Below, one piece after another: positions 819 to 64,000 of a stretch of DNA of 64,000 nucleotides. Under the pieces are notes generated by a model. The model had not been told where the DNA came from. It saw only the letters and a program-made list of their open reading frames with translations, and ran no database searches. Each line of letters opens with the position of its first letter. Positions within the stretch are counted from its first letter, which is position 1. The translations under genes were made by a program, and so were the position numbers. The stretch comes from Auanema rhodensis (lineage: Eukaryota > Animalia > Nematoda), in contig OZ059897.1 in assembly GCA_964057225.1 (NCBI GenBank), forward strand, positions 16,926,001 through 16,990,000, written 5' to 3'.

Positions 819-2936
819 ATGGATTCCATCTTGGAAACTCAAAGAAAACTTCATGAGGAACGTGAACGTTTAATTGATACGATCGTGAAAGAGGTTTTTG
901 AAATGTTTTGAATTCTATTTTTTTGTTGGGTTATAGATCATGTCTGAAAAAAGAACACACAAGGCAAAAATTAATTCTGAGCACAGAGTCCGTGCATTAC
1001 TTAATGTACGTTAAATTAACTTTTTTTGTTTCATCATTGGTCCATTTTCAGCGTTACAACGAATCTACAGAAGAGCTTGCCAAAATATATACAGATGAAG
1101 ATCGTTCTAGGGAAAGAGAAATTGAGGCTGTTAGTGGTCCAAATGAGTTTGCCGAATATTATTCTCGTCTGAAAACCTTAAGAGAAGCTCATAGAAGAAA
1201 TCCCGATGAGGTATTTTTTTGTGCTTATTCCCTATTAAAGTTTTGTGTTTCAGTTGGCGGAGCCTCTTTCGCTTGAATTCCAAAAGATGGTGGAAGAAAT
1301 TAATGATCCAGAGAGAGAAGAACACGATATTATCGAGTTCACAGATGAAGAAGGATATGGAAGGTTCTTTAATCTTATTTATTGTTTTAATTTTTTTGTA
1401 TTAAGATTTTTGGATTTACATACCATATATGCAGATTATATCAATCTAAAAGGAATAAAGGTATATTATCAACGAAAATCAATTTAAACGTCAATTTCAT
1501 TTTAAGAGAGTTGATTATATCGCCTATCTGAGCATTATCGATAAATTCAATGATATCCAACGCACTTCAACCAAGAAAACTGGGGCATATAAAGATTACT
1601 TGATTAAACTGAAGGTATTTTAATGGTTGCGAATCTATATTTATTTCTAATTTCAGAGCTACATGGTAACTTTCATAAATCGTACTCGACCAATGTTTGA
1701 TCTTGAAGAAGAACTCACTAAAGTAAAGATCTTTGTGTAGCTTGTGTATTGTATTTTCTTTTCTAGAATTCATTAGAGGTTGAGAAAGCTCTTGCTGATG
1801 GTTCTTTGCAAGGATGGAGCACTGAAAAAGCAGCTGGGGCACAGGTACAATCAGTCGTATTTCTAATCGAATCATTTTTAATTTTTTAAGCCATCTGCTA
1901 TCGATCTTTCAAAATATAACAGTGCTCAAGAATTGGAAGGCTTAGGTTTAGAACGTTTGAAAAGTGCTCTTTTGGCTTTGCAGTTGAAATGTGGAGGGTA
2001 ATTAGTATATTCTTTTTTACTTGTATTGATCTATGTTTATTTAGTACACTGAAAGAACGTGCAGAGAGATTGTACGCGACTAAGGGACATAAGTTGAGCG
2101 ACTTGGAAATGGGGATACATGCTAAGAAAGGAGACGAAGAAAGAAAAGAACAAGAGAGGACCAAGTTTTTAGCGAAATTGGAAGGAAATATAAAATGGTT
2201 TAGTTTTATTTAAATTTTCATTCTTCATTAATGTGTATATTTTAAGTATGTGTAACTTATTGTCTACTGAGTTAGAAGACACAAGAGAAAATGTAGAGCG
2301 TAAGCAAACACGTGCAGCAGGAGAAGTTGAAGAAGAAGAAGAAGAAGTTGAGGTATGGGTTTATAGTAAATCATATCTATAGTTTATTCCACCCAGGTTG
2401 TTAGTGAAGAGGAAGACACTGATGGAATTCCATATAATCCCAAAAACTTGCCACTTGGGTATGTTAATTATAAAATTACAAACTGACAATATTTTTTTAG
2501 TTGGGACGGTAGGCCAATTCCATATTGGTTATATAAACTTCATGGGCTCAATTTGTCATATGCATGTGAAATTTGTGGTAATCAGACATACAAAGGACCT
2601 AAAGCTTTCCAGAAACATTTTAACGTAATCTGATTAATCTTCGTTTTTATTGTTTTATGTTATTATTCAGGAATGGCGTCATTCTCATGGCATGCGTTGT
2701 TTGGGAATACCGAATACAGCACACTTTGCAAATATAACTAAGATTGAAGATGCTTTGGATTTATGGGCTAAAATTAAGACTGAAAGAGTATGTATAGTTT
2801 AATATCAGTGAATATGATTGGAATTTAGGAATTAATGAAATGGAACCCAGAAATGGACGAGGAGTTCGAGGATTCTGCTGGTAATGTCGTAAACAAAAAA
2901 ATGTATGAAGACTTGAAAAGGCAAGGACTTCTTTGA
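819..2936 (+). CDS. SF3A3: Splicing factor 3A subunit 3 (SF3a60/PRP9), multi-exon
   Basis: Spliced translation starts [18 protein letters not shown] and contains [53 protein letters not shown] and the zinc finger [34 protein letters not shown]. It ends [10 protein letters not shown] at 2934-2936. Confidence 0.97.
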
Positions 2937-3394
2937 TTGTTTCATCTCTATACTCTACTGTTAATTTTTATTGTTCTAAATTGGTCTCACGATTATTTCA
3001 CACTTCAACTGAATAAATTAATTCCTTTGTTACACTTGTTGACTACAATGAAATAATTACTCCTAATCTACTATGTATGTTACTGTTAAGAAATATTTAT
3101 TGAATTTAAGAAAAAAAACTTTATATAGAACCTGTAAGCTCTCAGGACCGATATTCAAAAATAAATGAAGCAAGTGCCCTAGTACACAATAGAAAGTAAG
3201 AGGATTATGCAACTAATTTGTTAGCAATATCATAGTAAATACCTAGGTTATATTGAGAGAGTATAAGATGAATAATTCAAAATTAAACAAATGTATATTA
3301 TTATGACTAATACAATAGCACCCAAAAACAAAAAAAAAGATTTGTAAATAAAATGAAAAATATAAACTATACAGCTATGCTAAATTATTACTTC

Positions 3395-5543
3395 TCATAA
3401 TATAAATAATAAAAACATGTACATTAATGAAACATTAATTCCGAATGATGACCCCAAAATACTACTCTTTTGAAGATTATTTCGTTGAGTTCCGGATTCC
3501 ATGTCTGATACTGAATATTCCGAATATGTTAACTTATCGTTTCTTTCATCATCTGTGTAATCATTATCTTCCATATCATTTTCAGTATCATCAATTTCTG
3601 CACCGTCATATGCTACGGGATCATTGTATCCTGAAAACCCACAACTTAAGAAGAAAATGAAAACCGATCTTACCAGCACCCTCAGCTTCCTCGGAAAACC
3701 CACCAACAGGATCTGGAGATAAATTATATATGGTCTTTGAAGGATATTCGCGAGGTAGCTCCTTGTCAATTTCAGCTTTGGACAGTATTGGTCGTTTATG
3801 AACCTAAAAGAATTAAAAGCTATGTCTTTTTTTCCATCCTAAACCTCAGAAATATCGTTTACTAAAGGCTGTCCATCTATTAGGTCGGTAGAAGATGATG
3901 ATGGTAAAATTCCTGAACTGTAAAATTAGAAACGATTGGCATTGAAGCGAACCGGTTGGCATTCTCTTGAGTAGTCTATTTCGAGTCTCTACGAACGTTT
4001 TACTAGTAAGATAGATAGCTTCGATATCATCGATAGCTGGACCCAAGTGTAATTTGTAAAGAGAACCTAAACACAATGTTCAAATTAATAAATCAGCATA
4101 GAGATCTAACCCATTTCATTTTCCATGATTTCTTTAGCATGAGTAATTCGATGTACATGAGATTGATCCGGATAAACAACATGGCAAGCTGTGGTTAATC
4201 GTTCACCAGCCCAATTGACAATTCCCCCAAGCATAACTTCACAGTAAAATGTTTGAGCTGTCTAAATAATATGTTCAGAAAGAGCAATCAATAAAACAGC
4301 ACCTTCTTATCCCAATTACGCTTAATTTCTTCATTGACAAAATTCTGGAAAGCTGAATTACTGACACTGAACCCTTGTGATCTCAGGCGATAAAATCTAA
4401 GATTATTGCTAAAGAAATAACATGCAAAATATTATTTACTCATAAAGTTTAGCAGTGCCATTATGCGCCCAACTATCCCAGTGTTCTTCATCACCAGGAC
4501 TTATTCTTCTTTCACAAATATCTGTATAACCTCGTCCAGTCATATCAATTAGTTTCTATAAGATAATCCAGAAAACGTTATTTAGAGAAAAAAGTTAATG
4601 AAGTTTAATACAAACGTACAATTTTGCCTGCTTGGTTATCATAAATTGCCATTGATTCTACACTATATGTAAAATACTCAGGAGGTTGACCAAGTGAAGA
4701 ACCCCATTCAAATAAATATAAAGGCTCTGCTCGAACAACATCAATTGAACTAGAAGAAATACGCTTAGTTATGGAAATACTGGACGACATGTTATCACTT
4801 AAGCAACAACGCTACTTTATATGAATAATAAACCTGTTAGCTGATGCGTCTCCAATTTCCAGACGATATGCTGATTTGCTTCCATGTTCAAGGGGAAACA
4901 GCGCACACGATTTCGCTTGGAACTTCTCAATGCAGGCCGAGTAAAGCTATACTGTGTAAAATAAGAGAAAGATATATAAAAAATCTGAACCTTTTCTAAT
5001 GGACAACTTGTTTCAGCTGAAATACTGACAGGCCTGCCCCTCTGAACTGTTCGCCAGATTGCTTGTCCTGTAGCTAAGAAAGAGCAATTATGTGAGTCCA
5101 TCCATCGAATAACGTCATCTATCTTAAATCAAAATATAAACCATAAGTACTAACAATATGACACAAACTGTTATAGTTGGTGATTGAGCACTTAGTCCGC
5201 GTACTGGCAAACTCTTCAACCAAGACCATTGATACTCAAGTCCTTTTGAAGAAAAAATCTAAATATTTTTTTTCTGGTGACTTTATTTGAATAAAACAAA
5301 CCTTTGGACTAAAATCTTCCCTCATCCATGGCCTTTTTAAATGTGAATATTTTCTGGCAAATTTTATACTATCCAAATCTGACACCTGAAAATTAATAAC
5401 AATGTAAGAACAATTAAGAATATGATAACCTGTTGAGCATCTAAACATGGATCTTCATCTAACATAGAGCGTGCTTGCCTTTTCGAACATGTTGCAACAA
5501 TAATAGTGTATAGTATGGATATTGATACGAGTAATCTACCCAT
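3395..5543 (-). CDS. Secreted, probably GPI-anchored protein with a degenerate class II nucleotidyltransferase (PolyA_pol/CCA-like) domain, multi-exon
   Basis: The spliced frame is open from the signal-like MGRLLVSISILYTIIVATCS to the hydrophobic tail SSFGINVSLMYMFLLFIL*. Internal FLATGQAIWRTVQRGRPVSISAET, EYFTYSVESMAIYD..KLIDMTGRGYTDICERRI and KLYEFYRLRSQGF line up with class II NTase motifs. The gene structure is solid; the fold call is by eye. Confidence 0.7.
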
Positions 5544-7492
5544 ATTCTTAAAGTGAAATAAAAAATTTGCATAAATTAATTTTAACGCTAGAGCATGTTT
5601 ATCAAATTATCATGAAGGAAGTAAATTAATTTCAGAAACTTAAATAATAATAGTTATTTTTATAATTTTAGTATGAAATTTAGTTTGATTGTGAAATAAA
5701 AATTCAATGGAATTTTACGTTATTTTTTCAAATATTTAAAAATGAATTGAGAGCAAGGTGTAAATAGAACACGTTAGTTAGCACAAGATATTTTGAACTT
5801 TCTTGTAGAAAGCAAAACTCTATTTGACACTTGTCAAAAAGCGATAAGTTGAAGAAAATAAGAAACATAAGAAACCAAAGTTTTGAAAATGATTTTCCAA
5901 ACTTGAACTCTGAAAAATATAAATTGAATTTGTTAATATAAAAAAAAACATCGTTTCTAGATTGAACAAGTTTGGTTTCTATACAAAAAATGGCGTTGTT
6001 TAGCTTGCCAGCTGTTAGTCCTTCCGTTTATTAGGTAGTAGGCTTTCTTTAAAAGGATTTATTCGAAACTGGGCTCATAGGCTGTGGAATGATGCTTTTT
6101 GGATTCCGTAGAGAAGTAGAAGGACTGGAAGATTGATATCCTAACAAGTAAACAGCATGTCAAATTGCATTTTTATTTCGAAAACAGGGAAAAGTTTGTA
6201 TGTTCGTCTCTTTTTAGTCAAAAGGAATATTTAAAAATTCATTAGAACTTTGATACTTCAAAAAATCTGGTTTCAATAAGAAGTCGAATGGTTGCAAATA
6301 ACATAATTTTTTTTTATTCGAAATTCTAAAGCAAAAATTTAAGAAAATATCAAATAGTTCAAAAAAATTGAATAATGATTGCTCATGATGACATAAAGAG
6401 CAAATGTTCAAATGACTAATTCATAAATTTGATTGGTGTTCTCTATATGTCAGATTAAAAGGCGATCAGTAGCTGTGAGTATCTAACTTTAATAAAATAA
6501 AAGATAAAATATTAAAAAAAATTGAACTGAAAAGAAAACATATATGAATGTCAAAGATATTTCCAATACATCTTCCTTTATATTATCTTCTCATATGCTT
6601 TTTTTTGTTGTTAATTGTTCAAAGGCAGCAAGTTTGAAAAGGAAATAGCTGTTAGAATGAACAATAACTACGCTCTTCTTGAAAACTCAATGTTTTCTAT
6701 TAATGGACACTAATTTTAAAGGATAGATCTAGAGACCACCAAAATAGCATAACGACAACGAAAATTTATGTGAAAATTAGTCGCCTATAGCTTAAATGAA
6801 ATTTTCTGACCAGTTATATAAATTTAATGGTGAAAATATCCGAAAAAAGCTTATGTAATATAAGTAAAATAGTATAGAGGGTAGAATAAAAGGTAAAATA
6901 ATAAAAAAATATTGAAAGTCAACCGATTAACGTTTGTAGAAAAATAAAATGACGATCAAGATTTATTTCAGATTTTGATACGTGAGCAACACGTGAAGTC
7001 ATATTTGAAAATTTGGCTATGACTGATTGACGATGCCAGATATTCCACTAAAATATTCTTTGAATGTCTATGACATAAAGTCGGAATGAGATGAGACAAG
7101 TGACCCTCCCAATATCCCAACTAGCCTATGCGGAAAAAGGCATCTGAAATGGGCTATGAACAAGTAATCAGTTGGCATCTTCATCTAAAAGATGAAACGA
7201 CCAAATAAGAAAAGAACGATGGCTGAAGACGAAAAGAAGGAACACGAAGAATAAGAAGTATACTACTCACAAAATATTATTGAGAGAAAATTAAGAATAA
7301 CTATAACATAATGTTGAGAAGATATAGTACATATAAGTTAATTAGTTAGGTTTTTAATGTCTGCGATAGTCTTATCCTTCCCTGTTCTCTCTTAGTCAAT
7401 GCTCGATGAACTAGCAACTAGTAAGCTTGAGACATGCATGTTTCATTCTAACATACATGTATGTGCTTCTTTGTCGTTTTATCTTATGGTCA

Positions 7493-16898: not shown

Positions 16899-18075
16899 CT
16901 AGTATCCTGGGGCGGTTCTTGGTGGTGGACAATGGTCGCACCCTCCTCCGCTTCCGGATTCTCCGGCGTCTCCTGGAGATCCTGGAGCTCCTGGGTTTCC
17001 TGGAGGTCCATCTGGTCCAGGTGGTCCTGGTGGTCCTGGTGGTCCTGGTTCGGAACTGCCAGCAGATCCTGCATTTCCTGGTGGTCCTGCTGGTCCTGGT
17101 GGTCCTGGTGGTCCTAAAAAGCATATACATTAGAAAAAATTCAATATTGTGTAAAATAATGGAAAAGCTAGTAAAAATAAATGAATTTACCAGCTGGTCC
17201 TGGAGTTCCTGGAACCTCGGTGACTTGTCCTGGGGCTCCTGGGTTTCCTGGGGCTCCGGGTTGTCCGTCTCCTCCTGGTGGTCCTGGTGGTCCTGGTGGT
17301 CCTGGAGGTCCTGGTTGACTTGGTGGTGGGCTTTGTCCTGGAGCTCCAGCGTTTCCGTCTGGTCCTGGTGGTCCAGCATTTCCTGGTGGTCCTGGAGGTC
17401 CTGGTGGGCAATCGAAGCAGAAATCAGCAGCTTGTGGAGCGGCTCCAGCTGGGGCATCAGATCCTGGGTTTCCTGGAGCTCCAGCAGTTCCATCAGTTCC
17501 TGGGTTTCCGTCAGATCCTGGTGGTCCTGGTGGTCCAGCAGCTCCGATTCCGCAAGAGCAGCAAGATCCTCCTCCTCCTGCTCCTCCTCCTCCACCAGAT
17601 GGGGCATCAACGCCTGAATCGTATCCTCCGGATGGAGCTCCTCCTCCTTGAGCATAAGTTCCAGCACCGTGAGCACGAGCTGGCTGAGCAACACGGCGGC
17701 CTTGGTCGCTCCATCTCTGCCATGAGGCCTGTCTCTTGACACGAGAGTCTACCCCCTTGATGGCTTCGAAACGATGGAACTCATCCCAAAGTCCGTCAGT
17801 GCGGTGACGGCAAAAATCCACCTCATTTTGAAGGGAGGATTGGACATGTTGCATGTAGTTGTACAACATGGGGACGGCTACAATAGCGGTCAAAGTAGCC
17901 ACCTAAAAAAGTTAAATAAGAAATGAACTAGGAATAATCAGTTGATTTTATTTGAAATATAAGCAGATTTCAAATCACTTAAGAAAATTGTATAACTAAC
18001 CGTTGAGATAGAGATCCCAAAGAAAGCTAGCCGCTTAAGGTTTTCGGCCTCCTGCAGCTTTGCTTTTTCTTCCAT
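16899..18075 (-). CDS. Nematode cuticle collagen, 3 coding exons
   Basis: [25 protein letters not shown]|[18 protein letters not shown] (Col_cuticle_N domain), RVKR cleavage site, SCCSCG, Gly-X-Y blocks, CFDC interruption and the end [13 protein letters not shown]. Confidence 0.98.
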
Positions 18076-61424: not shown

Positions 61425-62544
61425 AAGTTATATGAGATGTGATAGCTGTGGTCACTGAAAAATTGGCTTTAAAAGGCAATATGGGCGGTGATTGTTTGAA
61501 CGAAAGACGGTTTGGTCGATCATCATCTTGGGTACTCTTCTAGCCACATGACTGATTGACATCAACGTGATAATTAAAGCAAAAAATGGGGGGAAGTTGA
61601 TGGAAGAAATTGATCATCTATAGGACGAACATTTAAAATATAAAGATCATTCGTTAAACATTATGTTTAAAAATTTTTGCATTGAAGAAAATAAATTTTG
61701 AAAGTAGACAGGTATTTCTTCTTTTTTTTCTTTAGTTTGCGTAACAACGTGACTCGCCTCAAGCACTTGTCTCCATATTTCAACATTGTCTGTCCTACAG
61801 GGTTAGTAATGATGTGCTATTCATAAGTTTTTCTATAATTAGTACATATTTAAGTGTAATTCATGATGAAAATTATTATCAAATACTATGAGGCACATAT
61901 TTGTATCTCCAATAACAGTACTAAATAATAGTTTTAAATACTATTTTTAAGTACAATGAACCGTCATTCCTTTTCACAGATATAAGAAAAACAATTATAT
62001 ATTAAATATATATGATAAATTAAGAGAAATTTGAATGATCATGATATTCTTGATTATTAATCATTTTTGATCGTTTCTTGTAGTTGTTCATATTTGATAT
62101 GTACTACAATCAATGGGTACAACGTGCTGTGATAAAACTTAATTTCTCAATACTTTAAACCCAAGTTCAGATAATTCAATGTAATTCTAATCAAGACCAA
62201 TTAATTTCGTTTGAATCGTAACTTTCTTTAAACGTTGATTAACTAATATATCATCCATCTTCTTCTTTTTTAAAGTTTTTTCTTCTTTTCTCTTTTCAAT
62301 AGAGATCAAAGAAATTTGTCATGGTCAACTGCACTGCCAATTAAAATGTGTTAGTTTCAAAACTAACGCTAGATCGAGAACGGAAGTACTCGGCTCTGTT
62401 GTAGAGAAGCAGAGTGAGCTTATAAGATGTCTCCATTGGTTAGACACGAAGCCAATGTCAGAAGCCGACTCTGCCACTCTAGTGAGCATGCTTCAGCTTC
62501 AAATAGCTTATATATGAGCCAAATCATGTGCTGCTATAAATTGT

Positions 62545-62617
62545 GGCCGCGTGGCCCAATGGATAAGGCGTCGGACTTCGGATCCGAAGATTGCAGGTTC
62601 GAGTCCTGCCGTGGTCG
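62545..62617 (+). tRNA. tRNA-Arg (anticodon TCG)
   Basis: 73-nt cloverleaf with acceptor stem GGCCGCG/CGTGGTC, A box TGGCCCAATGG, anticodon arm TCGGA-CT-TCG-GA-TCCGA, B box GGTTCGAGTCC and a T-run terminator at 62621. Confidence 0.97.
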
Positions 62618-63714
62618 AAATTTTTGCAAAACTGAAACTATAAATTGGGAACTGAATATGATTGATACGAGCATTTAATTCTTATCAATCATTGAAAATG
62701 CTAGAGTTTTTTCAAGAAATGATTTATTAATTTCCAACTACATCACAAAGAAATTTATTTATAGAATCAGAAGTTCATTTTAAAGTTTTTTGCTTCGAAC
62801 TATTTGAAATAAATTTTCTTTGTGAAAATGCTCAATATGTGTATGACATTTATAATTTATTATAGAACCACGTTGAGAAACAAAATTTGAAACAGTACTT
62901 CAGGAAAACGCATTCTAATATACAAACTTTCTAAGAAAAAAGACAATCTTCTATCATTATTTCGAAAACCACGTGAGAGATGTTAAAAATACGAGAATGA
63001 TAATATTGTTTACGGGTTTTCTTCAAGTTTTCCAAATGCAAAAATGGACTTTAGTAGGTTTTTCAGTATCATCATCATTAAAAATTATGAAGAATTACAA
63101 TTCCATCGTTATAGCTACATAAATAACAGAATTCAATAGTTCAAAACGTATAAAAAAAACTAATTTATGAAGATAGCTAATCGATATTTTGAATTAGCTA
63201 GTTTGTGAGATCTGAATCAAAAAATTATCGATTACTTAGGAGAACTTCTTGAACGCAAATTTTTTAAAAATTTTTGTTATGAACTAGACAATAATGTATT
63301 GTTTATTTTAATTATATTAAATAAGTGGTAATGAATTATGTCACTTTCTACTAATGAGTATTTTATTTTGAACGTGTTTCCTACTTAAAGTGGTGGTGTA
63401 TTTTTTTTAATATTACGTTAAAAATTCAAAAATTAATCAATTAGTAGTGTAGTTGATGACCCAGATTAAAGTATAATATACAATTAATAACTAAGAAATA
63501 CCTATATCCTTTCCCACATAATATTTTGGGAACTGTCAATTTTTTATACAAAACGTGACCCGTGGCAATTTGGAATCCCCGCGCATTAGGCTCCACCCAC
63601 TTTTTAAAATCCTTATTATATCTCTTGTGGATAAATAGGCTGCCATTCATACCTTGAGGTAGCCTGCCGCATGGTTGTATATACATCCTGCCTATTTCTT
63701 AACCCAAAAACTCT

Positions 63715-63900
63715 ATAATTTATTGTCACAACGTTTGTATTATTTTCATTTCTGCTCAATGGCATGGACTATGTGAGATCTATTGCGAATGATATCACAG
63801 TTCTTGCTGTTGGGTAGAGATGAGAGTTGGTGTTATTTTAAGTTGCCTTCAAGATACCTTTCTAATTTTTCTGTAGGTTCAAATCTGGGTGTGCTTCTTA
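63715..63900 (-). mobile_element. Possible decayed Tc1/mariner transposase C-terminal remnant
   Basis: The minus strand gives HPDLN (63877-63888), then a frameshifted EKLERYL, then DLT*SMP. This resembles the SPDLNPIEN..L and L..SMP.R motifs, with stops and frameshifts and no TIR identified. Confidence 0.3.
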
Positions 63901-64000
63901 GTCGTATTTGTTTTTATGACTAGAATCACATTCAGCATTGCATCTACTAAAGTAAAATTAGGCCTGTTCCCTCGTAGATAAAGTTATCTGTCAGCATAAT

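What the first reader, a model, noticed from the sequence alone, without database searches (positions are those of the whole stretch)
3395..5543. Cell-surface pseudo-nucleotidyltransferase: CCA/poly(A)-polymerase-like fold between a signal peptide and a GPI-type tail
Seen in sequence: an intact multi-exon gene with an N-terminal signal peptide, extra cysteines, an acidic linker and a hydrophobic C-terminus with no cytosolic tail. Its core follows the motif order of class II nucleotidyltransferases. FLATGQAIWRTVQRGRPVSISAET matches YLVGGAVRDxLLGxxPxDxDxxT. EYFTYSVESMAIYD matches RRDFTINAMAYD. KLIDMTGRGYTDICERRI matches LIDxxGGxxDLxxxxI. KLYEFYRLRSQGF matches RxLRxxRFxxxGF. The metal-binding DxD is replaced by SIS and the GG..RD and RRD motifs are lost. 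Established knowledge: these enzymes normally act on RNA inside the cell. Inference: a catalytically dead RNA-tailing fold is displayed extracellularly, perhaps as a nucleotide/RNA-binding receptor or structural surface protein. I know of no described function for this arrangement.
Basis: partly seen in the sequence, partly recalled or inferred. Interest (0 to 1): 0.85.

Follow-up and report, generated by a model that had tools for sequence, protein, structure and literature searches.

The report
Secreted CCA/poly(A)-polymerase-like protein in a nematode
An expressed, single-copy nematode gene encodes a secretory, probably GPI-anchored glycoprotein whose folded core looks like the enzymes that add CCA or poly(A) tails to RNA inside cells but lacks their catalytic residues; this uncharacterised family includes C. 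elegans Y54G11A.1.

Summary

- **Gene model:** RNA contigs from four runs join 13 exons (window 5543-3395, minus strand) into one 1572-nt CDS of 523 aa. The signal-peptide and tail exons are joined to the core.
- **Family:** the closest relative found is an unnamed Auanema protein (73% identical). Relatives were found only in clade V nematodes, including strongylid parasites and C. elegans Y54G11A.1. None has a Pfam domain, and I found no main-text paper on them.
- **Fold:** an AlphaFold model of the Auanema orthologue has a confident core (pLDDT 85-94). In an exhaustive PDB comparison, the only nine chains with Z of 8 or more are TENT5/FAM46 (Z 16) and class II CCA-adding/poly(A) polymerases (Z 13-15.6). 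Other nucleotidyltransferases score 5.8 or less.
- **Sequence homology:** profile-profile comparison with class II enzymes gives 88% probability (P 3e-6).
- **Catalytic site:** the canonical residues are not kept. GG is GQ, DxD is S-I-S, RRD is lost, and EDxxR is NGTAK.
- **Secretory features:** family-wide signal peptides, eight invariant cysteines, a conserved N-glycosylation sequon, an acidic disordered linker and a terminal hydrophobic tail.

I read it as a surface-displayed pseudo-nucleotidyltransferase. Its ligand is unknown.

The parts
3395..5543 (-). Whole CDS span of the 13-exon gene. Exons: 5543-5430, 5385-5302, 5258-5169, 5122-4991, 4946-4834, 4749-4620, 4555-4440, 4396-4303, 4261-4111, 4066-3953, 3912-3845, 3803-3674, 3630-3395. 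It encodes 523 aa, with the TGA stop at 3397-3395.
   Evidence: 12 GT..AG joints in RNA contigs of 4 runs; translation. Transcript contigs run from about 5552 to beyond 3300.
5484..5543 (-). Signal-peptide-like N-terminus, residues 1 to about 20: M-G-R followed by a 15-residue hydrophobic core.
   Evidence: Hydropathy. An N-terminal hydrophobic segment is present in 12 of 14 family members. No SignalP was run.
3953..5468 (-). Folded ectodomain, residues 26-380 (introns included in the span). It is a class II nucleotidyltransferase / TENT5-like head plus neck, with 8 invariant cysteines and the conserved sequon N177.
   Evidence: AF2 model of the orthologue P0001 (81% identical in the core), pLDDT 85-94. 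VIA-align Z 16.4 to FAM46C and 15.6 to T. maritima CCA enzyme.
5003..5080 (-). Relic of motif A, residues 111-136. G115 lies at the first G of GG. S129-I130-S131 lie at DxD in the ungapped register, followed by the invariant E133.
   Evidence: hhalign aligns G115 and the following helix with the GGxVRD helix; family alignment.
4848..4868 (-). Near-invariant strand Y-R-L-E-I-G-D, residues 167-173 (Y, E, I, G and D are invariant). E170 is the candidate equivalent of the third NTase carboxylate.
   Evidence: Family alignment. Strand 163-168 of the model. The assignment of E170 is an inference from topology and spacing.
4638..4679 (-). Relic of motif B, residues 202-215. RRD is lost; the T/S-V-x-x-M-A-I part is kept.
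   Evidence: hhalign pairs it with RRDFTINAMA.
4502..4555 (-). Motif C-like segment, residues 222-239. D225, T227 and G230 are invariant.
   Evidence: hhalign pairs it with the class II segment iiDP..G..D; invariants.
4369..4450 (-). Relic of motif D, residues 257-269, with an intron inside the span. K257 lies at the Arg of EDxxR. ED is N-G here but E-D or D-D in strongylids. R265 is invariant.
   Evidence: hhalign; family alignment.
3467..3910 (-). Disordered linker, residues 381-500, with introns inside the span. It is acid-rich and holds one conserved short motif (residues 395-409).
   Evidence: pLDDT below 50 for residues 374-507 of the orthologue model; charge counts; invariants P395, D399, R406 and P407.
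3398..3466 (-). C-terminal hydrophobic tail, residues 501-523. It is a candidate GPI-attachment signal, with the small residues G-S-S upstream and no charged residue after the hydrophobic stretch.
   Evidence: Hydropathy and small-residue check. A tail of this kind is present in 12 of 14 family members. NetGPI was not available.

Best explanation
This is the orthologue, in a rhabditid nematode, of C. elegans Y54G11A.1. It belongs to an uncharacterised family that I found only in clade V nematodes.

Shown here:
- The gene is expressed, spliced from 13 exons, and single-copy.
- It encodes a 523-aa protein. Its folded core (residues about 26-380) is a very diverged homologue of the head and neck domains of class II nucleotidyltransferases (bacterial/eukaryotic CCA-adding enzymes and bacterial poly(A) polymerase I). 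Those domains are structurally shared with TENT5/FAM46.
- The canonical catalytic and nucleotide-selecting residues are not kept.

Inferred:
- The protein enters the secretory pathway through an N-terminal signal peptide.
- It is N-glycosylated and cross-linked by four disulfides.
- A GPI anchor added at the C-terminal hydrophobic signal tethers it to the outer face of the membrane, at the end of a roughly 120-residue acidic disordered stalk.
- It no longer polymerises nucleotides. It works as a binding module whose conserved cleft residues (E133, E170, D173, D225, K257, R265) hold a ligand that is still unknown.
For: - Gene model and expression: (12 GT..AG joints in 4 runs).
- Single copy. 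The same genome has a separate canonical TRNT1 and a separate TENT5.
- Family range: (Auanema, strongylids, Heterorhabditis, Diploscapter, many Caenorhabditis including C. elegans Y54G11A.1).
- Fold: AF2 core pLDDT 85-94. Foldseek's 50 listed hits are all TENT5 or class II enzymes.
- VIA-align: Z 16.4 over 261 aa at 3.5 A to FAM46C, Z 15.6 over 227 aa to the T. maritima CCA enzyme, Z 14.6 to E. coli PAP I.
- Exhaustive search of 48,161 chains: only 9 chains reach Z of 8 or more, and all are of these two groups. The next NTase classes score 5.4 or less.
- ESM Atlas neighbours carry PF01743.
- Sequence homology: hhalign probability 73-88%, P 3e-5 to 3e-6, and z 9.7 against column shuffles for the first comparison.
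- Loss of catalytic motifs.
- Secretory features kept across the family: signal-like N-termini and hydrophobic C-termini in 12 of 14 members, 8 invariant Cys, sequon N177 in 8 of 10, acid-rich linker in all.
- Purifying selection on the core: 81% identity to Auanema against 40% in the tail.
Against: - No Pfam model matches any orthologue, neither PF01743 nor PF07984, even at E of 10 or less. A family profile finds no CCA or TENT5 chain in PDB by sequence.
- The structure is a prediction for the 73%-identical orthologue, not for this exact protein, and it comes from a shallow alignment of 14 sequences.
- Signal peptide and GPI signal were judged by simple rules, not by SignalP or NetGPI.
- Glu133 and Glu170 are invariant, and strongylids have E-x-E. 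A non-canonical metal site and residual catalysis therefore cannot be excluded.
- No ligand, location or phenotype is known.
Confidence: 0.6

Rival explanations
1. The protein is still an enzyme. A nucleotidyl- or phospho-transferase would act in the ER/Golgi lumen or outside the cell, using a non-canonical metal site built from E133, E170 and D173. In strongylids an extra Glu would give E-x-E.
For: E133 and the strand Y-R-L-E-I-G-D are invariant or nearly so across the family. Strongylid orthologues read I-E-G-E and E-D-x-x-K, which is closer to active class II enzymes. NTase-fold enzymes that work in the secretory pathway exist (fukutin and FKRP, discussed in PMC2794190).
Against: In the ungapped register, the first catalytic Asp position is never acidic in any member. 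In this protein both DxD positions are Ser. The second Gly of GG, the RRD ribose sensor and ED of EDxxR are also lost. Different lineages keep different relics, which is the pattern of relaxed constraint on catalysis.
Confidence: 0.17
2. The protein is in the secretory pathway but is not GPI-anchored at the surface. The C-terminal hydrophobic stretch would be a plain membrane anchor or a retention element, so the protein would reside in the ER/Golgi or be shed.
For: The hydrophobic tail is short (10-16 residues). Clear small-residue triplets upstream are missing in several orthologues. No GPI predictor was run.
Against: The tail ends the protein with no cytosolic residues in most members, and it follows a long polar linker. 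That is the usual layout of GPI signals.
Confidence: 0.15
3. The resemblance to nucleotidyltransferases is a modelling or chance artefact, and the core is an unrelated nematode-specific fold.
For: No Pfam or PDB sequence hit. Sequence identity to the structural matches is 9-13%.
Against: Three methods agree, though the language-model and Atlas-structure searches count as one source: AF2 with Foldseek/VIA, ESM features and the Atlas's own model, and hhalign with shuffle controls. Matches cover both domains and stand 8-10 Z units above the next fold class.
Confidence: 0.03

Closest known systems
Class II nucleotidyltransferases: bacterial and eukaryotic CCA-adding enzymes and E. coli poly(A) polymerase I (Pfam PF01743 head domain plus neck)
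   Same: The head plus neck fold matches: Z 13-15.6 over 214-235 aligned residues. Motifs A to D follow the same order and are detectable by profile-profile comparison.
   Different: There is no PF01743 match. The DxD, second Gly, RRD and ED residues are lost. There are no body or tail RNA-binding domains. Added features are a signal peptide, 8 conserved cysteines, an N-glycan sequon, an acidic stalk and a GPI-like tail. Class II enzymes work in the cytosol, mitochondria or bacterial cytoplasm (established knowledge).
TENT5/FAM46 non-canonical poly(A) polymerases (PF07984)
   Same: These are the best structural matches over the whole core: Z 15.7-16.4, 261 aligned residues, rmsd 3.5-3.9 A. TENT5 itself is described as resembling bacterial PAP/CCA enzymes (PMC7049688).
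   Different: There is no PF07984 match. TENT5 keeps the Asp-Asp-Glu triad (PMC7049688) and is cytoplasmic. This genome has its own canonical TENT5 elsewhere.
C. elegans Y54G11A.1 (NP_496972.2, UniProt Q9XVZ7)
   Same: It belongs to the same family as the C. japonica and other Caenorhabditis members. It has the same layout of signal peptide, core, acidic linker and hydrophobic tail.
   Different: It is named only 'uncharacterized' or by a misleading automatic label. No main-text paper in the library mentions it. Its motif A relic keeps V-R and I-L-G-K-K, which this protein has lost.
Fukutin / FKRP / LicD-type NTase-fold transferases of the secretory pathway
   Same: They have a nucleotidyltransferase fold and work in the lumen of the secretory pathway (PMC2794190).
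   Different: They belong to a different branch of the superfamily. They do not appear among the 50 best structural matches listed, whereas class II and TENT5 chains fill the top. They keep a DxD-type metal site (PMC2794190).

Membership tests
Class II nucleotidyltransferase head domain (PF01743 PolyA_pol) | Match to the Pfam model above its gathering score (23 bits) | tested here: not met
   hmmscan of 8 family members at E of 10 or less finds no PF01743. Single exons of this gene give none. A six-frame scan of the genome with PF01743 finds only the TRNT1 gene on another contig.
Class II nucleotidyltransferase head domain (PF01743 PolyA_pol) | Head (Pol-beta-like alpha/beta) plus helical neck fold | tested here: met
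   On the AF2 model of the orthologue: Z 15.6 (3h39), 14.6 (3aql), 13.7 (1miv), 13.2 (1ou5). Class I CCA enzyme and canonical PAP reach only Z 4.0-4.3.
Class II nucleotidyltransferase head domain (PF01743 PolyA_pol) | Motif A GGxVRD...DxD with two catalytic Asp | tested here: not met
   Only G115 is kept. The sequence reads T-G-Q-A-I-W-R ... P-V-S-I-S-A-E-T. No family member has an acidic residue at the first Asp position in the ungapped register.
Class II nucleotidyltransferase head domain (PF01743 PolyA_pol) | Motif B RRDFTINA (ribose recognition) and motif D EDxxR (base selection) | tested here: not met
   RRD is Y-F-T here and ED..R is N-G-T-A-K. The flanking hydrophobic pattern and K257/R265 are kept. 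Strongylids keep E-D/D-D..K.
Class II nucleotidyltransferase head domain (PF01743 PolyA_pol) | Statistically supported remote sequence homology (profile against profile) | tested here: met
   hhalign score 42.9, P 3.1e-5 over 166 columns; 150 shuffles give 15.2 +/- 2.8 with maximum 29.7. With 14 family members: score 49.7, P 3.3e-6, probability 88%.
TENT5/FAM46 (PF07984 NTP_transf_7) | Match to the Pfam model; Asp-Asp-Glu triad | tested here: not met
   No PF07984 hit at E of 10 or less. The triad is not kept. The genome's real TENT5 is at G000:C7:16864743-16866875.
TENT5/FAM46 (PF07984 NTP_transf_7) | Catalytic domain plus C-terminal helical domain forming a cleft | tested here: met
   Z 16.4 (7cqz) and 15.7 (6jyj), with 261 residues aligned across model residues 59-410.
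GPI-anchored surface proteins | Cleavable N-terminal signal peptide | tested here: inconclusive
   M-G-R plus a 15-residue hydrophobic core, with small residues before residue 20. The feature is kept in 12 of 14 relatives. SignalP is not available.
GPI-anchored surface proteins | C-terminal signal: small omega residues, short spacer, terminal hydrophobic stretch, no cytosolic tail | tested here: inconclusive
   G-S-S, then F-G-I-N-V-S, then a 10-residue hydrophobic end with no charge. NetGPI is not available and there is no biochemical test.

The most novel reading that the evidence does not exclude
The family would be a nematode surface receptor or enzyme for extracellular nucleotides or RNA. 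The relic NTP/RNA-3'-end cleft of a CCA/poly(A)-polymerase-like fold would be displayed outside the cell on a GPI-anchored acidic stalk. There it would bind, or in strongylid parasites that keep E-x-E and E-D-x-x-K still modify, extracellular nucleic acid or nucleotide ligands.
Probability: 0.15. Interest if true: 0.85.

Novelty: new variant of a known kind. Interest (0 to 1): 0.62.

Why it matters
As far as I know, class II nucleotidyltransferases and TENT5 enzymes are only known to act on RNA inside cells. A disulfide-bonded, glycosylated, probably GPI-anchored copy of that fold would be a new cellular setting for it, and a clear case of an RNA-tailing enzyme scaffold turned into an extracellular pseudoenzyme.

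The family has no Pfam model and no paper that I could find. It is conserved from free-living rhabditids to hookworms and Haemonchus, where a surface protein is of practical interest. It also has a C. elegans member (Y54G11A.1), so location, phenotype and ligand can be tested directly.

Tried and rejected
- My first sequence-only gene model had the wrong acceptor for exon 5 and the wrong start for exon 6. RNA contigs corrected it.
- Pfam on single exons gave nothing useful.
- phmmer of exon 7 against PDB gave only a chance hit.
- The family profile against PDB sequences gave no nucleotidyltransferase.
- hhalign of the family against single E. coli Cca or PcnB sequences gave no signal. A profile of gammaproteobacterial Cca alone gave only a weak local hit, P 0.02 to 0.004. 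The signal became clear only with a diverse profile that included phage enzymes.
- After I took the family to be absent from C. elegans and its close relatives. A search seeded with the C. japonica member disproved this.
- A Heterorhabditis model fuses the family to an RNA 3'-phosphate cyclase domain. In this genome the cyclase gene lies 4.6 Mb away, so I treat the fusion as a gene-model artefact.
- Searches for locus tags and gene names in papers found nothing relevant.
- I could not hand the spliced 523-aa protein itself to the structure and family tools, because it has no single reference. The 73%-identical orthologue P0001 served as proxy.
Full report
**Gene and transcript**

The window is AT-rich (about 31% G+C) and comes from a nematode.
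- It carries a cuticle collagen gene and a mir-44 precursor.
- The nearest protein relative of the gene under study is from Auanema.
- The assembly has 181 Mb in 112 contigs. The window is G000:C5:16926001-16990000.

On the minus strand between 5543 and 3395 I first built a gene model by eye. I then laid the contigs of four public runs on it.
- Each run has one contig that crosses the whole gene with 12 joints, all GT..AG on the minus strand.
- The contigs fixed two boundaries that I had wrong: exon 5 is 4946-4834 and exon 6 is 4749-4620.
- The 13 exons give a 1572-nt ORF of 523 aa.
- The contigs begin 5-9 nt upstream of the ATG and continue about 170-190 nt (in three of the four runs) beyond position 3300.
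- The signal-peptide exon, the core and the tail exon are therefore parts of one mRNA.
- All four runs come from one study, and their RNA nature is a guess of the index. The intron-less joints are what show that they are RNA.

**Protein features seen directly**

- Residues 1-20 are M-G-R followed by a 15-residue hydrophobic segment.
- The protein ends in G-S-S-F-G-I-N-V-S plus ten hydrophobic residues, with no charged residue after them.
- Residues 447-500 hold 17 acidic against 4 basic residues.
- There are nine cysteines and five N-x-S/T sequons.

**Relatives**

No exon matches a Pfam family. An exhaustive HMMER search with exon 9 found 13 proteins. Two full-length ones stand out: P0001 (522 aa, Auanema sp. 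JU1783, unnamed) and P0009 (Haemonchus).

Word-indexed searches were seeded with P0001, with a 14-sequence alignment (A1), and with the C. japonica member. They found the family in:
- Ancylostoma, Necator, Nippostrongylus, Heligmosomoides, Haemonchus, Oesophagostomum and Cylicocyclus;
- Heterorhabditis and Diploscapter;
- Caenorhabditis angaria, bovis, auriculariae, japonica, sp. 36, brenneri, remanei, nigoni, tropicalis and elegans.

The C. elegans protein is Y54G11A.1 (NP_496972.2, Q9XVZ7), annotated as uncharacterised. No member outside clade V nematodes turned up, but these searches have limited reach. None of the proteins has a precomputed Pfam domain. The names given by sources (PKD_channel, CxC5, Hepar_II_III_N, ULP_PROTEASE) are automatic and have no Pfam support. 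No paper in the library mentions Y54G11A.1 in its main text.

In the window's genome the gene is single-copy.

The spliced protein is 72.6% identical to P0001 overall: 81% in residues 26-380 and 40% in the acidic tail. It is 39-54% identical in the core to strongylid and early-branching Caenorhabditis members. This shows purifying selection on the core.

**Fold**

AlphaFold2 on P0001 with alignment A1 gave a confident core (residues about 30-372, pLDDT 85-94). Residues 374-507 are disordered and there is a terminal helix.
- Foldseek against PDB: all 50 listed hits are TENT5/FAM46 or class II CCA-adding enzymes and E. coli PAP I, with E down to 1e-7.
- VIA-align, second look: mouse FAM46C Z 16.4 (261 aligned, 3.5 A); T. 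maritima CCA enzyme Z 15.6 (227 aligned, 3.4 A); E. coli PAP I Z 14.6; B. stearothermophilus CCA Z 13.7; human TRNT1 Z 13.2. Cid1, TUT7, CdnD and MenT-type nucleotidyltransferases follow at Z 5.8 or less.
- Foldseek-independent comparison with 48,161 PDB representatives: only nine chains reach Z of 8 or more, and all are from these two groups. Archaeal class I CCA enzyme and canonical PAP reach only 4.0-4.3.
- ESM Atlas: its nearest clusters by language-model features are poly(A)-polymerase-head-domain proteins. All ten listed structural neighbours of its own (low-confidence) model carry PF01743.
- A shape search with my model gave PF01743 in nine rows and PF07984 in one.

TENT5 and class II enzymes matching together is expected. 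The FAM46B structure paper reports that FAM46B resembles E. coli PAP and the T. maritima CCA enzyme in both domains (PMC7049688).

**Sequence-level homology**

HMM-to-sequence methods fail, as does hhalign against single sequences. I therefore fetched reference enzymes:
- E. coli cca and pcnB;
- 80 gammaproteobacterial Cca loci;
- 80 phage class II enzymes.

From these I built a 26-sequence profile with less than 60% pairwise identity.
- hhalign of the family core (this protein plus nine orthologues) against it gave score 42.9, P 3.1e-5 and 73% probability over 166 columns.
- 150 column shuffles gave 15.2 +/- 2.8 (maximum 29.7), and the reversed alignment gave 12.7.
- With five more Caenorhabditis members added (and the partial C. 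japonica model dropped), the score rose to 49.7, with P 3.3e-6 and 88% probability.

- E-Y-F-T-Y-S-V-E-S-M-A-I with R-R-D-F-T-I-N-A-M-A;
- L-I-D-M-T-G-R-G-Y-T-D with i-i-D-P..G..D;
- A-K-L-Y-E-F-Y-R-L-R-S-Q-G-F with D-P-L-R-i-L-R-a..R-F...G-F.

**Catalytic residues**

The state of each canonical position:

| Canonical feature | This protein | Other family members |
|---|---|---|
| GG of motif A | G115 kept, second residue Q | G kept throughout |
| V-R-D helix | I-W-R | Caenorhabditis keeps V-R and I-L-G-K-K |
| DxD (ungapped alignment to D-I-D-I-A-T-S-A type enzymes) | S129 and S131 | First position never acidic; second is Glu only in strongylids |
| Two residues after DxD | Glu133 | Invariant |
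| RRD of motif B | Y-F-T | Lost |
| EDxxR of motif D | N-G-T-A-K | E-D or D-D..K in strongylids |

The DSSP strand of the model (S-A-E-T) would also allow a register in which S131 and E133 take the DxD places. hhalign instead puts DxD in a gap. Without coordinates I cannot choose between these. In every register this protein lacks at least one canonical carboxylate.

The strand Y-R-L-E-I-G-D is conserved throughout the family, with Y, E, I, G and D invariant. Its Glu170 lies 37 residues after E133. By my recollection this matches the spacing between the second Asp and the third carboxylate in class II enzymes, so this is an inference.

Different lineages keep different relics. That pattern fits descent from an active class II-type enzyme followed by relaxed constraint on catalysis. 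A separate set of residues is held invariant: E133, S135, E170, D173, D225, T227, G230, K257, R265 and E299.

**Secretory features across the family**

- Eight cysteines (33, 109, 136, 145, 154, 235, 298, 317) are invariant.
- The sequon at N177 is present in 8 of 10 aligned members.
- Hydrophobic N-termini and hydrophobic C-terminal ends occur in 12 of 14 members. The exceptions look like truncated or mis-ended gene models.
- The linker is acid-rich in all members.

None of this is expected of a cytosolic RNA enzyme. All of it is expected of a lumenal or extracellular glycoprotein. I had no SignalP or NetGPI, so the GPI anchor is an inference.

**What it is not**

- The genome has its own canonical TRNT1 at G000:C1, about 15.566 Mb.
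- It has its own TENT5 at G000:C7, about 16.866 Mb.
- The gene studied here is a third, distinct locus.
- Fukutin/FKRP-type secretory NTase-fold enzymes (PMC2794190) do not appear among the structural matches listed.

**Mechanism, with its steps marked**

- Shown: the gene is expressed and spliced, the family is conserved, the fold is class II/TENT5-like, and the canonical catalytic motifs are lost.
- Inferred: co-translational entry into the ER, disulfide formation and N-glycosylation, GPI attachment at the C-terminal signal, and display of the globular domain on a long acidic stalk.
- Speculative: the conserved cleft binds a nucleotide, a nucleic-acid end or another anionic ligand. Whether strongylid members retain activity is open.

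**Verdict**

This is a previously undescribed, nematode-restricted branch of a known enzyme superfamily in an unusual cellular setting. Its function is unknown but directly testable in C. elegans.

Noticed in passing
window 5465-5482 (minus strand; residues 21-26): Just after the signal-like segment the family has a basic site ending in Arg before S-M-L-D/E-x-D-P-C. Here it reads K-R-Q-A-R|S; many orthologues read K-R|S or R-K-R|S. It may be a proprotein-convertase cleavage site that removes a short propeptide. The Elegans-group Caenorhabditis members lack it.
   Followed up: partly
window 3783-3868 (minus strand, intron inside; residues 395-409): A short conserved motif, P-L-V-N-D-I-S-E-V-H-K-R-P-I-L, sits inside the otherwise disordered and poorly conserved linker. 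P395, D399, R406 and P407 are invariant. It may be a docking or processing site.
   Followed up: partly
window 17171-17902 (minus strand): An ORF with the nematode cuticle collagen N-terminal domain (PF01484, E 6e-15) and collagen repeats. It explains the G+C-rich stretch with long overlapping ORFs at 16.8-17.9 kb.
   Followed up: partly
window 908-1273 (plus strand): An ORF with an SF3a60-binding domain (PF12108, E 1.5e-10). It is probably an exon of a splicing-factor SF3a subunit gene and lies next to the gene studied here.
   Followed up: no
window 62544-62618 and 63874-63947 (plus strand): A tRNA-Arg(TCG) gene and a mir-44 family microRNA precursor (56.2 bits, just above the gathering score of 54).
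   Followed up: no
P0023 (Heterorhabditis bacteriophora model); G000:C5:12308161-12308724: One public gene model fuses this family to an RNA 3'-terminal phosphate cyclase domain (PF01137). In the window's genome the cyclase gene is 4.6 Mb away on the same contig, so the fusion is probably a merged gene model.
   Followed up: partly
window 5545-5552 (minus strand, 5' end of the transcript): In three of the four runs the RNA contigs reach 5552 with one mismatch; the fourth stops at 5548. The genomic sequence there reads t-t-t-a-a-g just before a-a-t-A-T-G, like a 3' splice acceptor. Trans-splicing to a leader is possible but not shown, because the contigs carry no leader sequence.
   Followed up: no
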